From: Octopus bimaculoides
Lineage: Eukaryota
DNA length: 64,000 nucleotides
Assembly: GCF_001194135.2 (NCBI RefSeq)
Contig: NC_068982.1
Span: forward strand, 154,608,785 to 154,672,784
Direction of reading: 5' to 3'
The position numbers and the translations under genes were made by a program. Shown here piece by piece: positions 60,326 through 64,000 of the stretch; position 1 is the stretch's first letter; every line of letters begins with the position of its first letter. Under the pieces are notes generated by a model. The model saw only the letters and a program-made list of their open reading frames with translations, was not told the origin of the DNA and ran no database searches.

Positions 60326-60420
60326 ACTATTAATAAATGTCTTGTCATTCTTAGACATACTTTAAAGTAATGGTCATACTTTAACATTAATATGCATGTA
60401 TATATTTTATCTTTCACAGA

Positions 60421-60579
60421 ATGATGATTGTTACAACATCCCAACAAAACTCTTGCTCCAATATGCAGAAGTTGGCACGAAGACGTGTACGGTTACATCT
60501 CCGTAGACTCAGGCATCGTGAATATTCTAAACTGCGTACACTTGTACCATCAGTGGCTAACAACAACAAAGTTTCTAAA
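60421..60579 (+). CDS. Atypical bHLH protein (Id/emc-like HLH), first identified coding exon: basic-like region, helix 1 and loop
   Basis: Acceptor TTTTATCTTTCACAG ends 60419; open frame MMIVTTSQQNSCSNMQKLARRRVRLHLRRLRHREYSKLRTLVPSVANNNKVSK; donor GTAAGT at 60580 (phase 0). Confidence 0.9.
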
Positions 60580-61457
60580 GTAAGTAGTTGAAGACATAAT
60601 TCTACAAACTATTTGTCCTCTATATTCCTCTACAAGTATTTTACATCCACATAATGCATCTGCTAATCAAATCCAGTTATTAATCAAATTGTATATTAAT
60701 TTATACTGTTGGTAATCATAATTTGTAATCGTAAGAAGAATGACATAAATTTCGGACATGATTTCTTCGAGCAACGAGATCTTGTATGTGGTTCTTGGAT
60801 CTGATAAATGTAGCTTCCAATTCTCCTTTAAACTACACCCAACTGTTTTGGAGGAGCTAAGAACGCATTGGATAATGTAGTTCTTTGACATACTTCTAAA
60901 ATGTGGGGTCATGGTTGATTTGCCTCACAAGTTGCTCAAGCAAGACTAACCAACAACAACAACTGATAAGTCTTGGTGAGTTCAATAGAACTAATAATGG
61001 CAGCATGTGTTCATTGTTGTAGTTACCGTTGCATATCTAACACAATACCCTAACGCAATACAGTATGCATGTATTAGTACTCGAGTAAGAAGTCTGCAAA
61101 ACTTTAGGCTACATGGGGCCGAATCAAACTGTTTTAAATAATATATGTAACTCCTACTAAAGGTGCTGAGTGACTCTTTCTTTTGTTTGTCCACTCACCC
61201 GTGTGTGTGTGTGTGTGTGTGTGTGTGTACACATACACGACAGACTTGCACACATTTGACGTTTACTCCAAATTATTGGTCAACCTGAGATTAACTGATC
61301 AACCAAAACCCGTTTTTCTTACATTGAAATCTTTGATAGGTAATACGGAATTGTTTGAATTGCCTTAGTATAACTATTAAGGTCCTAAAAGGAAAAGGAC
61401 CGACTCGTCTCCAGAAGAATTTGAAATCACAATATAGAGGGACAAAACAAAAGAATA

Positions 61458-61528
61458 TAACAACACTCAAAATAAATTAAATTTCGCTGATGAGGTTTAA
61501 TAACACCGAAACATGCCCAGTGTTGTTA
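61458..61528 (+). ncRNA. Intronic hammerhead-like motif with canonical CUGAUGA/GAAA core, probably mutated at the cleavage site
   Basis: CTGATGA 61487-61493; stem II GGT..ACC; GAAAC-AT-GCC (canonical GUC); 10-bp helix TAACAACACT (61458-61467) / AGTGTTGTTA (61519-61528). Confidence 0.55.
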
Positions 61529-62198
61529 CTGTACAGCCAAAGATTGAACTCATTCCCAAGAGTGCTGTCTTTTTGATATATATTAATTTAAATTCTACTT
61601 TTTTTTTCTAACTGGTGTTTTGGACCAGAATTAATTTTAATTAATTTAAATTTCATAGTTTACATTATATAGATTAGCGCTAACCGTACTATTCCATGTG
61701 GAGAAATTAACATAATCAATATGTCTTCTTCTACATGTTGTTGCATGGACAAAATACATTCTTTTGTATTCAGAGAAAAACTGACTTATTAATGTAACCA
61801 TAGGTTTTCTCTTTAACACTAAACCTAATTTTACACTGCCTGATTTACTTCTCCAGCCTCTCGGCACATTGTTGGCTACTTTATCTATCTTTACTCTCAA
61901 TCAACGTACCACATAATCAATTTACAAGGATCTGTCTCATCTTCTCAGCCTCCCACCAGTTTTGGAAGTTCTGAAAATGGTAGGGTCATCAGTGCTGCGC
62001 TTCCTCCTCTGACTAACCCATTAAAAAAAGCAATTCATCCAGCCTTTTGCTCTTAGTATTTTCTTCAATCAATATCTTTCCTCATATCTGAACTTCCTTT
62101 CTAATCATGGTCCAAACCCAACACTTTTCCCCCCATCAGACTCTAATAATGAATAATACTGTATGTAAAACCATGTTTATTTCTACATTTTGTTTTAG

Positions 62199-62277
62199 GT
62201 GACAGTGATAGAAGAAGCTATTAAGTATATTGATTCCCTGCACAAGGCTTTGGTGGAACGTTTGCAGAATGTTCGAC
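62199..62277 (+). CDS. Atypical bHLH protein, next coding exon: helix 2
   Basis: Acceptor TTTTGTTTTAG ends 62198; VTVIEEAIKYIDSLHKALVERLQNVR continues in frame from ..KVSK; donor GTAAGT at 62278 (phase 1). Downstream exon not identified. Confidence 0.9.
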
Positions 62278-64000
62278 GTAAGTATTCTCATATTTCAGTG
62301 CAAGACATTACGTTAAGTCAATTAGCCTCAACTTAATTAAGGCATTTCTAACATTTTCTACGTTATGCAATACGACATATTGCCATATGGAGTATAAAGT
62401 CAACTGATCGTGTTCTTAGCATGCATATTAATGAATTTTTGCTTCTTAAGACGGTTCATATTGATTTCTACTATAAGCACAATGCTTCGAATTTGAGAGA
62501 GGAGTAAAAAAAGATTATAGCAATCGGAACGACAACATAATAATCTTGTTGACTGAAATTGTAATAATGTCTTCTTGAAAAGACATTAATAATGTACGAG
62601 AATTGAAAATGTTTCGGATGGGATTAGCAATCGAATTGCTGGCTCAGCTTATGAAGAGTATCGTTCATACTCTACTGCTTTCACCAGATGAGTAAATAGA
62701 ATAATTATGTAGCAACAGAGAATATCAAAATCATCGAGCTCTAGCCTAAACGTCTGACAGTATTTAAATATTTTGGCTTTACATCCTCAGTGTATATTCC
62801 ATTGGCTCCAAAATCTGTAGTCTTTTGCTAATATTAGAAAAGAATAAGTTGGTGACAATTAAACAGCCGTATAATGGTAAAGTAGTAAAAGTTGAATGGT
62901 ACACACTCGTACTTACATACATATATACATACATATATACATAACCGAAAGCAATGTTCAAAGAAAACAATGGATATAATCGAATTCGATCAATAATAAA
63001 ACGAGGTGATACGTATCCTCTCACCAACGATCAGCTTCCATTAGCCACCAAGGAGGAGTCAAGTGGCTGACTGGTTGGTTAATATAGCAGATTCTTATTT
63101 CTGATGATTCTGTGTTCATAGTACTAGGTAACCATAGAAATAAAGTTGAATGAACGGGTAGGGGTTCAAATGCGAACAATACACCTATTGTTACATTCAT
63201 GGAACAACTACTGTTTCAGTTCTTCCTCTTCTTGTTTTTACTTGTTTTGTTTCTTTGTCTTTTGTTGTTCTTTTTTAAATATTTTTTCTTACTCGTGTTT
63301 TATTTAATTTCATTAATTTCTTTTCTTTGCTTATTTTTTGTAAATAATTTCGAAACAGCGCAAATGAGATCGTAGTATTTTGAGTCAATAAGAAAATTGC
63401 GGTGGAGGTATTAATGGTGGTNNNNNNNNNNNNNNNNNNNNNNNNNTGGGGATGTTCATTATGACGATGGTTGTGTTAAGAGTGGCGGTAGGGGTGATGA
63501 TGTTTGATGGATGAGCAGAAAAAGAAAAACAAAAGGTTATGCATTTAAAAGAAATGAGAAAATGTACGTATAGAATAAAGAAGGGACATTATTTAAATAA
63601 TGTCAATTCGAGGCATACGTTGATAACTATATAAGAAAAGGACAATATAATTAAAAAGAATACAGTAGTTTTATTTATTTACTTATTTATTGGAATGATA
63701 ACTTGAATAAATAACTGGAAACTACAGGTTTAAAGTTTTTCTACTTTACTCCATTACATTGTGTCTTCTGATCGGTTTCGAGGCTTTGGTCTTTCTCCTT
63801 GTTACTGCGTGTTCTCTGTCAATAAGGAGCAGAAGTAGAGAATCATGGTCTTTGATGTATGTGTAAAAAGAGGGACAGTACCTACCCACTACTGTACGGA
63901 TGGATGGAAGGGTTGGAAATAAGCACGATAAGTAAGTATTAAGTGGCGGAGGGACAGGCAGATAAATATCAGGCAATCCTTTCCACATTTTCCCCCTATC

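What the first reader, a model, noticed from the sequence alone, without database searches (positions are those of the whole stretch)
60420..62283. Spliced gene for an atypical bHLH: Id/emc-like HLH with an Arg-rich but non-canonical basic region
Seen: two exons with textbook splice sites join in frame to give KLARRRVRLHLRRLRHREYSKLRTLVPSVANNNKVSK|VTVIEEAIKYIDSLHKALVERL; the ORF track misses both. Known: helix 1 and loop closely resemble Id/emc (YSKLKELVPSIPQNKKVSK), which lack a basic region and act as dominant-negative partners. DNA-binding bHLHs need the E..R pair of the ERxR motif, 11 and 8 residues before the helix-1 F/Y. Here those positions are R and L, although the segment is very Arg-rich. 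Inference: an orphan or poorly described group-D-like factor that either sequesters partners with an added NLS or nucleic-acid-binding patch, or binds non-E-box DNA. It may belong to one of the invertebrate-restricted orphan bHLH families.
Basis: partly seen in the sequence, partly recalled or inferred. Interest (0 to 1): 0.7.

Follow-up and report, generated by a model that had tools for sequence, protein, structure and literature searches.

The report
Octopus Pearl-type atypical HLH gene
The two exons are real and belong to a small, strongly conserved octopus gene for a helix-loop-helix protein that lacks the usual DNA-reading residues; it belongs to an almost unstudied family found across molluscs, worms and non-insect arthropods, so it is a sound but modest find.

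Summary
Observation confirmed. Coding exon 1 (60420/60421-60579) and exon 2 (62199-62277) join in frame across GT-AG sites. They give residues 1-79 of a 139-aa protein identical to the Octopus bimaculoides RefSeq model LOC106878238 ("uncharacterized protein"). A third coding exon lies about 13 kb beyond the window.

The gene is functional. An intronless transcript contig exists in a decapodiform cephalopod, and dN/dS is 0.036 against another octopod.

The protein has a Pfam HLH domain that matches only from helix 1 onward. It is not an orphan. It belongs to a conserved family of 125-260-aa proteins in molluscs, annelids, nemerteans, chelicerates, myriapods and crustaceans. Shared features:
- a three-exon structure with a phase-0 intron between loop and helix 2;
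- a Lys/Arg-rich helix without the E-box Glu (1 of 104 members has it);
- a C-terminal E(K/R)xRxPS(Y/F) motif.

Emc/Id is the nearest labelled family, but the new family forms its own clade, and Capitella has both. Its distribution and tandem Capitella paralogues fit the named but barely studied "Pearl" family; I could not obtain a Pearl sequence to prove this.

Function is inferred: an HLH dimeriser that cannot read a canonical E-box.

The parts
60400..60420 (+). Acceptor-like site in front of the first coding exon (polypyrimidine tract + CAG, then A before the ATG). It implies an upstream non-coding 5' exon, which I did not locate.
   Evidence: Sequence. The …TTYCTTTyrCAG|AATGATGATTGTT stretch is conserved in the second octopod locus L002, while the sequence further upstream diverges. 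A search with the decapodiform 5'UTR found nothing.
60421..60579 (+). Coding exon 1, residues 1-53: N-terminal tail, basic helix, helix 1 and loop (ATG at 60421; ends …KVSK).
   Evidence: Translation; tblastn of RefSeq protein P0002; same exon in L001 and L002.
60469..60522 (+). Non-canonical Lys/Arg-rich helix KLARRRVRLHLRRLRHRE (residues 17-34). Arg24 sits where the E-box Glu should be, Leu25 and Leu27 where Arg10 and Arg12 should be, and Arg28 at the Arg13 position.
   Evidence: family and reference residue frequencies. AlphaFold2 predicts one continuous helix over residues 14-41 with pLDDT 90-97. The Pfam HLH match starts only at profile position 20.
60523..60549 (+). Helix 1 core YSKLRTLVP (residues 35-43); Leu38 and Pro43 are invariant in the family.
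   Evidence: Alignment A1; Pfam HLH.
60550..60579 (+). Loop SVANNNKVSK (residues 44-53), ending at the exon boundary.
60580..62198 (+). Intron 1 (GTAAGT…TTTTAG), phase 0, between the loop's …VSK and helix 2's V…. It contains a (GT)n run at about 61205-61230.
   Evidence: The same intron position occurs in L002, in both Capitella paralogues, in Ostrea edulis and in the spider Uloborus.
62199..62277 (+). Coding exon 2, residues 54-79 plus the first base of codon 80: helix 2, VTVIEEAIKYIDSLHKALVERLQNVR. Glu58, Glu59, Tyr63, Ile64, Leu67, His68 and Leu71 are invariant in the family.
62278..62283 (+). Donor GTAAGT of intron 2 (phase 1). The matching acceptor and exon 3 (residues 80-139, with the conserved helix ENVKEVVCQMM and the motif EKKRKIPSF plus a basic tail) lie about 13 kb downstream, outside the window.
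   Evidence: (exon 3 at L001 24898-25079, which is window coordinate 75318 onward).

Best explanation
This is the Octopus bimaculoides member (RefSeq LOC106878238, 139 aa) of a conserved protostome family of small helix-loop-helix proteins. That family is most probably the one named "Pearl" (Gyoja et al. 2012), which Bao et al. 2017 placed beside Emc/Id in bHLH group D.

Shown:
- It encodes an HLH dimerisation domain.
- The helix in front of helix 1 is Lys/Arg-rich throughout the family but lacks the Glu9/Arg10/Arg12 residues that read an E-box.

Inferred:
- The protein enters the nucleus and dimerises through its HLH, with itself or with class-A/E-protein partners.
- Any dimer containing it cannot recognise a canonical CANNTG half-site.
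- Basic residues are conserved at the three positions that face the major groove in solved bHLH-DNA complexes (-15, -11, -7, i.e. Arg20, Arg24, Arg28). I therefore think the helix still contacts nucleic acid, non-specifically or at a non-E-box site, and that the protein redirects or damps partner bHLH activity rather than acting as a bare Id-type sink.
- The conserved C-terminal E(K/R)xR(K/R)xPS(Y/F) motif with its basic tail probably docks a cofactor or is a regulatory site.
For: Gene reality:
- Exact match to RefSeq and UniProt proteins.
- Same three coding exons in a second octopod.
- Intronless transcript contig in a decapodiform.
- dN/dS 0.036 overall and 0.026 over the basic+HLH codons.

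Domain:
- Pfam HLH scores 35.7 bits and covers profile positions 20-52 only. All 37 aligned family members hit HLH, and no other domain is shared.
- AlphaFold2 gives helix 14-41, a loop and helix 53-78, with pLDDT 90-97.
- Foldseek returns bHLH structures for the top 30 of 38 matches; the rest are very weak non-bHLH hits. ID2 fits at 1.3 Å over 37 columns.

Family:
- 180 representatives have E ≤ 1e-3 and 31 have E ≤ 1e-10 among 1.84 billion proteins.
- Named members come from cephalopods, bivalves, gastropods, a chiton, nemerteans, annelids, chelicerates, a myriapod and crustaceans; none is from an insect or a vertebrate.
- The phase-0 loop/helix-2 intron is shared by octopus, Capitella (two genes), oyster and spider.
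- The C-terminal motif occurs in 65 of 132 unique members.

Basic helix:
- Glu at -11 occurs in 1 of 104 members, against 90% of 87 reference bHLHs.
- Lys/Arg frequency is 0.67 at -15, 0.70 at -11 and 0.79 at -7. The mean is 7.75 Lys/Arg in the 20 flanking residues.

Relation to Emc:
- Emc/Id gives the best pairwise hits.
- The family clade has 56% bootstrap support and the Emc clade 74%; they are sisters in the observed tree.
- Capitella has a canonical Emc (Cc51) as well as two family genes.

Fit to Pearl: the published distribution is bivalve/annelid/spider/cnidarian, with four linked copies in Capitella and placement in group D (PMC5381572).
Against: - No Pearl sequence could be obtained, so identity with that named family rests on distribution, copy number and tree position only.
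- Bao et al. report Pearl as missing from limpets, yet Patella caerulea has a member (P0009).
- No named cnidarian member turned up.
- One paper (PMC5634135) says the original authors put pearl in group A, not group D.
- The family+Emc sister grouping has only 14% bootstrap support on 33 columns.
- Nothing here tests dimerisation, localisation or nucleic-acid binding.
- The Lys/Arg-rich helix also carries conserved hydrophobic residues at -5, -8 and -12, one position out of register with canonical bHLHs. It could therefore be a protein-binding or coiled-coil surface, or simply a nuclear localisation signal.
- AlphaFold2 tends to draw such segments as helices regardless.
Confidence: 0.6

Rival explanations
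1. Pure Id/Emc-type dominant negative. The protein sequesters E-proteins or class-A bHLHs in dimers that cannot bind DNA, and the Arg-rich stretch serves only as a nuclear localisation signal.
For: - The HLH is closest to Id/Emc.
- The E-box residues are missing throughout the family.
- The protein is small and has no other domain.
- CgPearl, like CgEMC, is broadly expressed in oyster (PMC5381572).
Against: - A localisation signal needs basic composition, not helical periodicity. Here Lys/Arg is conserved specifically at -15, -11, -7 and -4, which lie on one helical face.
- Id/Emc manage without any such flank.
- Species that have this family also keep a canonical Emc, which argues against simple redundancy.
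Confidence: 0.3
2. It is the octopus orthologue of Id/Emc itself, merely divergent.
For: - Emc/Id is the best-scoring labelled family: 52-59% identity over 29-32 residues.
- RefSeq names the Pomacea member "ID-4-like".
- I did not directly show that octopus has a separate canonical Emc.
Against: - Helix 2 reads VIEEAIKYIDSLH. The Emc signature LLQHVIDYILDL is kept from human to Lottia, Capitella, Daphnia and Nematostella.
- The octopus protein sits in a family clade that excludes all 8 Emc sequences.
- Capitella has Emc plus two genes of this family.
- The family has its own intron position, basic helix and C-terminal motif.
Confidence: 0.04
3. The family is not Pearl but a conserved protostome HLH family that has never been named, missed because its HLH is split by an intron.
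For: - The family is absent from the 64 Capitella and 63 Lottia bHLHs listed by Simionato et al. 2007.
- All database names are "uncharacterized" or "hypothetical".
- A Patella member exists although Pearl was reported as missing from limpets.
- No cnidarian member was seen.
- Group assignments for pearl conflict between papers.
Against: - Among the families listed by Bao et al. 2017, only Pearl combines bivalve, annelid and spider members with absence from human and fly.
- Pearl has several linked copies in Capitella and groups with Emc. All of this matches what I found.
Confidence: 0.2
4. Chance ORFs or a decaying pseudogene in repeat-rich sequence.
For: The surrounding 59 kb is gap-ridden, rich in microsatellites and poor in genes.
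Against: - dN/dS is 0.036.
- Splice sites are conserved in two octopods.
- A transcript contig exists in a decapodiform.
- Orthologues occur across four phyla.
Confidence: 0.01

Closest known systems
Pearl bHLH family (Gyoja, Kawashima & Satoh 2012; placed in group D by Bao, Xu & Shimeld 2017, PMC5381572)
   Same: - Taxon range: bivalves, annelids and spiders, and absent from human, fly and worm.
- Several linked copies in Capitella.
- Groups next to Emc.
- Small and little studied. [quoted passage not shown]
   Different: - Not verified by sequence.
- I found members in limpet (Patella), other gastropods, a chiton, cephalopods, nemerteans, crustaceans and a myriapod, none of which are in the published distribution.
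- I found no named cnidarian member, although Pearl was defined from a coral.
Id / Extramacrochaetae (bHLH group D)
   Same: - Small HLH-only proteins with the same helix 1 and loop pattern (YSKL+xLVPSxxxxxKVSK).
- No E-box-reading residues.
- Nearest family by pairwise score and in the tree.
   Different: - Id/Emc have no basic N-terminal flank, whereas octopus has 9 Lys/Arg in the 20 residues before helix 1.
- Helix 2 is LLQHVIDYILDLQ in Emc and VIEEAIKYIDSLH here.
- The family has its own C-terminal motif and an intron inside the HLH.
- Emc and this family coexist in Capitella.
Canonical E-box-binding bHLH factors of groups A and B (e.g. MyoD, Max)
   Same: - A continuous basic-plus-helix-1 helix is predicted.
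- Helix 2 (KVTVIEEAIKYIDSL) resembles MyoD-type KVEILRNAIxYIExL.
- Basic residues are kept at the -15, -11 and -7 positions.
   Different: - Glu9 becomes Arg/Lys; Arg10 and Arg12 become Leu/Ala/Leu.
- The hydrophobic residue at -4 and the Asn at -3 are replaced by Arg/Lys, and the hydrophobic position is shifted to -5.
- There is no leucine zipper, PAS or Orange domain.
Plant atypical HLH proteins (PRE/ILI1 type; Pfam bHLH_ILI)
   Same: Small HLH proteins without a canonical basic region that act by heterodimerisation. There is a weak Pfam bHLH_ILI hit of 19-20 bits, below the cut-off of 27.
   Different: The hit is below threshold, and these are plant proteins. The likeness is one of function, not ancestry.

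Membership tests
bHLH superfamily (Pfam PF00010 HLH) | HLH domain scoring above Pfam's gathering threshold | tested here: met
   35.7 bits against a cut-off of 20.7, E = 7.7e-9, residues 35-67. 37 of 37 family members match.
bHLH superfamily (Pfam PF00010 HLH) | Two amphipathic helices separated by a loop, with a fold like solved bHLH structures | tested here: met
   AlphaFold2 gives helices 14-41 and 53-78 at pLDDT 90-97. The top 30 of 38 Foldseek matches are bHLH chains; the remaining eight are very weak non-bHLH hits. E-values are weak throughout (≥ 0.06).
E-box-binding bHLH (groups A/B) | Glu9, Arg10 and Arg12 in the basic region (positions -11, -10, -8 from the helix-1 aromatic residue) | tested here: not met
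   Octopus has Arg24, Leu25 and Leu27. The reference set has Glu 90%, Arg/Lys 96% and Arg 94% at these positions. The family has Glu in 1 of 104 members.
Id/Emc (group D) | No basic region in front of helix 1 | tested here: not met
   Octopus has 9 Lys/Arg in the 20 residues before Tyr35. The family mean is 7.75, with position-specific conservation.
Id/Emc (group D) | Helix 2 signature (L/I)(L/I)QHVIDYI(L/C)DL(Q/E) | tested here: not met
   Octopus has VIEEAIKYIDSLH. The Emc signature is seen in human ID1-4, Daphnia, Lottia, Capitella and Nematostella.
Id/Emc (group D) | Falls inside the Emc clade in a bHLH phylogeny | tested here: not met
   NJ tree of 119 sequences. The Emc clade (74% bootstrap) excludes it, and it lies in a separate 25-member family clade (56%). 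The two clades are sisters, but with only 14% support.
Id/Emc (group D) | Binds E-proteins and blocks their DNA binding | not testable with these tools
   Needs co-IP or two-hybrid assays and EMSA.
Pearl (Gyoja et al. 2012) | Groups with the type sequences (Acropora digitifera, Pinctada fucata, Crassostrea gigas Pearl) in a phylogeny | not testable with these tools
   The paper is not held, and no Pearl sequence is in the supplements I could search.
Pearl (Gyoja et al. 2012) | Present in bivalves, annelids and spiders; absent from human, Drosophila and Caenorhabditis | tested here: met
   Named members occur in many bivalves (including Pinctada, Ostrea and Saccostrea), in Capitella, Ridgeia and Paralvinella, and in many spiders. 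No insect, nematode or vertebrate name appears among about 300 hits.
Pearl (Gyoja et al. 2012) | Cnidarian members (the family was defined from a coral) | tested here: inconclusive
   No named cnidarian protein appeared among the hits. Many hits are unnamed environmental sequences.
Pearl (Gyoja et al. 2012) | Several linked paralogues in Capitella teleta (four reported) | tested here: met
   Two tandem family genes lie about 9 kb apart on KB296161.1. I did not look for the other two copies.
Pearl (Gyoja et al. 2012) | Reported as missing from limpets | tested here: not met
   Patella caerulea KAK6191881.1 (P0009) is a clear member. This may only reflect the older, fragmentary limpet assemblies used in 2017.

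The most novel reading that the evidence does not exclude
The family's conserved Lys/Arg helix is a second, non-E-box way for an HLH dimer to read DNA. It keeps basic residues at the three groove-facing positions but swaps Glu9 for Arg/Lys. That would make this a distinct DNA-binding class that sits beside the non-binding Id/Emc proteins and was lost in insects and vertebrates.
Probability: 0.25. Interest if true: 0.6.

Novelty: new member of a known kind. Interest (0 to 1): 0.33.

Why it matters
bHLH networks drive neurogenesis and cell-fate choice, and cephalopods are a prime system for studying how a large brain is built outside the vertebrates. This gene adds a strongly constrained HLH partner that is absent from fly, worm and vertebrate models, so nothing is known about what it does.

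At family level the analysis gives:
- a clear definition (the shared intron, the basic helix without Glu9, the C-terminal motif);
- a much wider distribution than published;
- a direct, testable question: is this a second Id-like brake, or an HLH protein with a different DNA target?

For annotation, it shows that RefSeq's "uncharacterized" and "ID-4-like" labels can be replaced by one family name.

Tried and rejected
- Obtaining a Pearl/Amber/Peridot sequence. Gyoja 2012 is not held. The supplements of PMC5381572 and PMC5634135 are not held. Searches of the supplements of PMC1828162, PMC5064789 and PMC5875013 for "pearl" or "IEEA" found nothing. A further literature search gave no new source.
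- Naming the divergent environmental subgroups through cluster look-ups. Nearly all are unnamed ENA, Logan or Tara sequences.
- Locating the 5' non-coding exon with the decapodiform 5'UTR. There was no significant match.
- Looking for exon 3 or a paralogue inside the window. There is none.
- A Biopython NJ tree with bootstrap timed out. I replaced it with a numpy implementation.
- An Rfam scan of the window found nothing. Pfam on the long ORFs found only a sub-threshold zf-RVT hit.

Rejected readings: chance ORF or pseudogene (dN/dS, orthologues, transcript); the octopus Emc orthologue (signature, clade, coexistence in Capitella); SOHLH, Amber or the lophotrochozoan-only families of Bao et al. 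(their distributions do not fit).

I ran no further search on looking for a canonical octopus Emc, because vertebrate Id proteins would have swamped the candidate list.
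Full report
**1. The observation**

The window is Octopus bimaculoides chromosome sequence (CM046602.1). Reading 60200-62500 and translating confirms the finding.

An ATG at 60421 follows a polypyrimidine-CAG acceptor. Exon 1 runs to 60579 and is followed by GTAAGT. 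Exon 2 begins at 62199 after TTTTGTTTTAG. The two join in phase 0 to give MMIVTTSQQNSCSNMQKLARRRVRLHLRRLRHREYSKLRTLVPSVANNNKVSK|VTVIEEAIKYIDSLHKALVERLQNVR.

The gene therefore continues. The third coding exon is about 13 kb downstream, outside the window (L001 24898-25079, which is window coordinate about 75318).

The acceptor in front of the ATG is conserved in a second octopod while the sequence upstream is not, so there is probably an untranslated 5' exon. I could not find it.

**2. It is a real, constrained gene**

- The 79-aa peptide is 100% identical to RefSeq "uncharacterized protein LOC106878238" (139 aa) and to UniProt A0A0L8GA64, a 98-aa model that reads through the second donor.
- A second octopod assembly (labelled Argonauta hians) has the same three coding exons and the same splice sites.
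- A 1042-nt Logan contig from run SRR29271475 carries the whole ORF uninterrupted, with UTRs. Its protein has the same N-terminal and HLH sequence as a cuttlefish (Acanthosepion) protein. This is a spliced transcript of the orthologue in a decapodiform.
- Nei-Gojobori dN/dS between the two octopods is 0.036 (dS 0.57), and 0.026 over the basic+HLH codons. Against the decapodiform, synonymous sites are saturated, yet the proteins are 82-85% identical.

Chance ORFs and a pseudogene are excluded.

**3. What the protein is**

Pfam HLH matches at 35.7 bits (cut-off 20.7), but only profile positions 20-52, that is from helix 1 onward. The best solved-structure sequence matches are ID2 (3e-5) and ID1.

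AlphaFold2, run with a 37-sequence family alignment, gives:
- one continuous helix over residues 14-41 (Arg-rich segment plus helix 1);
- a loop, then helix 53-78, with pLDDT 90-97 across this region;
- a less confident helix over residues 91-106.

The top 30 of 38 Foldseek PDB matches are bHLH proteins, and the remaining eight are very weak non-bHLH hits. All E-values are weak. ID2 superposes at 1.3 Å over 37 columns.

**4. It is not an orphan**

An exhaustive HMMER scan of 1.84 billion representative proteins found 180 relatives at E ≤ 1e-3 and 31 at E ≤ 1e-10. Many of them align across the Arg-rich segment and out to the C-terminus.

Named members come from:
- cephalopods (Octopus, Argonauta, Acanthosepion);
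- bivalves (Mytilus, Pinctada, Pecten, Ostrea, Saccostrea, Mercenaria, Tegillarca, Solemya, Sinanodonta);
- gastropods (Pomacea, mislabelled "ID-4-like"; Patella; Elysia) and a chiton;
- nemerteans and annelids (Capitella, Ridgeia, Paralvinella);
- many spiders, a scorpion, ticks and mites, and horseshoe crabs;
- a millipede and crustaceans.

No insect, nematode, vertebrate or cnidarian name appeared. Every label is "uncharacterized" or "hypothetical".

The family shares four features:
- The HLH core, EYxKLRxMVPSxAxKxKVSKVTVIEEAIRYIDELHxAL, with nine invariant residues.
- A three-exon structure with a phase-0 intron exactly between the loop's …VSK and helix 2's V…. This is seen in octopus, both Capitella genes, Ostrea edulis and the spider Uloborus.
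- A Lys/Arg-rich helix in front of helix 1.
- A C-terminal (F/C)E(K/R)x(R/Q)(K/R)xPS(Y/F) motif with a basic tail, in 65 of 132 unique members. In octopus this is residues 120-129, in exon 3.

No second Pfam domain is shared.

**5. The basic region**

I number positions back from the helix-1 aromatic residue (Tyr35 = 0).

| Position | 87 labelled Lottia/Capitella/human bHLH domains (Simionato et al. 2007 supplements) | Octopus | Family (104 unique members) |
|---|---|---|---|
| -11 | Glu 90% | Arg24 | Glu in 1 of 104 |
| -10 | Arg/Lys 96% | Leu25 | mostly Leu/Ala (25 representatives) |
| -8 | Arg 94% | Leu27 | Leu commonest |
| -4 | Leu/Ile/Val about 82% | Arg31 | Lys/Arg 0.68 |
| -3 | Asn 79% | His32 | variable |

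No member combines Glu(-11) with Arg(-8). The non-canonical basic region is therefore a family trait.

The segment is not random either. Lys/Arg frequencies are 0.67 at -15, 0.64 at -14, 0.70 at -11, 0.79 at -7, 0.68 at -4 and 0.73 at -2. Position -5 is hydrophobic in 70% of members, and Glu at -1 is 99% conserved. The mean is 7.75 Lys/Arg in 20 residues.

Positions -15, -11, -7 and -4 fall within one 80° arc of a helix. From my own knowledge of the Max-DNA structure, -15, -11 and -7 correspond to His28, Glu32 and Arg36, the base-contacting residues.

Shifting the register by one residue restores the hydrophobic -4 and Arg -10 matches, but still gives no Glu.

**6. Relation to Emc/Id**

Against 99 labelled reference domains, the best blastp hits are Emc/Id (Daphnia Emc 59% over 32 residues; human ID2 52%), followed by several group-A families.

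I built a neighbour-joining tree of 119 domains over the 33 HLH columns:
- the 25 family representatives form a clade (56% bootstrap);
- the 8 Emc sequences form another clade (74%);
- the two clades are sisters in the observed tree, but with only 14% support.

Emc orthologues keep the helix-2 signature LLQHVIDYILDL from human to Lottia, Capitella, Daphnia and Nematostella. The octopus protein has VIEEAIKYIDSLH.

Capitella has a canonical Emc (Cc51) as well as two tandem genes of this family about 9 kb apart. The family is therefore a paralogue of Emc, not its orthologue. I did not show directly that octopus has its own Emc.

**7. Which named family?**

Bao, Xu & Shimeld 2017 (PMC5381572) list one family that fits. 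Pearl (Gyoja et al. 2012):
- has a distribution of "Bivalve, Cnidaria, Annelid, Spider";
- is absent from human and fly;
- has one copy in oysters and four linked copies in Capitella;
- falls in group D with Emc.

All of this matches, and none of their other families has ecdysozoan members apart from SOHLH, which is clearly different.

Points against:
- I could not obtain any Pearl sequence.
- They report Pearl as missing from limpets, whereas Patella caerulea has a member.
- I saw no named cnidarian.
- PMC5634135 reports that the original authors put pearl in group A.

I put the Pearl identity at about 0.75-0.8. The alternative is an unnamed family, missed because its HLH is split by an intron. 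It is absent from the 2007 Capitella and Lottia catalogues.

**8. Mechanism**

Shown: an HLH fold, no E-box-reading residues, a conserved basic helical face, strong constraint, and a conserved C-terminal motif.

Inferred: the protein is nuclear and dimerises through its HLH, and any dimer that contains it cannot read a canonical CANNTG half-site.

I favour, weakly, the view that the basic face still contacts nucleic acid, so that the protein redirects or damps partner bHLHs rather than acting as a bare Id-type sink. My reason is that position-specific, helically phased conservation is more than a localisation signal needs, and Id/Emc do without it.

The pure dominant-negative-plus-localisation-signal reading remains a strong rival (about 0.3). 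Nothing here tests binding, localisation or partners.

**9. Verdict**

The gene is already modelled in RefSeq but is unnamed. It is a new (cephalopod) member of a known but essentially unstudied family. Interest is modest: real and cleanly defined, with one testable open question about the basic helix.

Noticed in passing
window 1-59000: The rest of the window is gene-poor. It has 18 assembly gaps (6202 N) and very abundant di- and trinucleotide microsatellites, which create long spurious ORFs. There is no Rfam match at gathering score.
   Followed up: partly
window 5620-6012 (+): This ORF has a weak zf-RVT match (zinc-binding region of reverse transcriptases; 23.3 bits, below the cut-off of 27.5). 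It is probably the decayed tail of a non-LTR retrotransposon. Two other long ORFs, 20636-21325(-) (which has a YIDDC-like motif by eye) and 26218-26724(-), gave no Pfam hit.
   Followed up: partly
L004 (Capitella teleta KB296161.1) 10001-11556 and 19671-21556: Two tandem paralogues of the family lie on the same strand about 9 kb apart. Each has the intron at the same loop/helix-2 position as octopus.
   Followed up: yes
proteins P0067, P0078, P0094 and similar (environmental): A related subgroup comes from marine metatranscriptomes. It has an almost invariant EYSKLRTLVPALTEREDLSKVEIIEETIRYIDALHHQLA, an N-terminal FDRLVPRY motif and no basic flank. Its source organisms are unknown (possibly copepods).
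   Followed up: no
P0284 (Tigriopus californicus) and relatives P0220, P0256, P0310: These are copepod proteins with ADPLRGV…EFSRLKNLVPSISKKxxVSKLDVILEAIRYIDQLQDQL and a non-basic flank. They sit between this family and Emc in sequence, and may be the copepod Emc or a third group-D lineage.
   Followed up: no
P0007 (Pomacea canaliculata XP_025088104.1): RefSeq names this family member "DNA-binding protein inhibitor ID-4-like". This looks like a misannotation, given the separate clade and the basic helix.
   Followed up: partly
window 61205-61230: There is a (GT)n microsatellite inside intron 1 of the HLH gene. Intron 1 is about 1.6 kb here but only about 0.4 kb in the second octopod (L002).
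   Followed up: no
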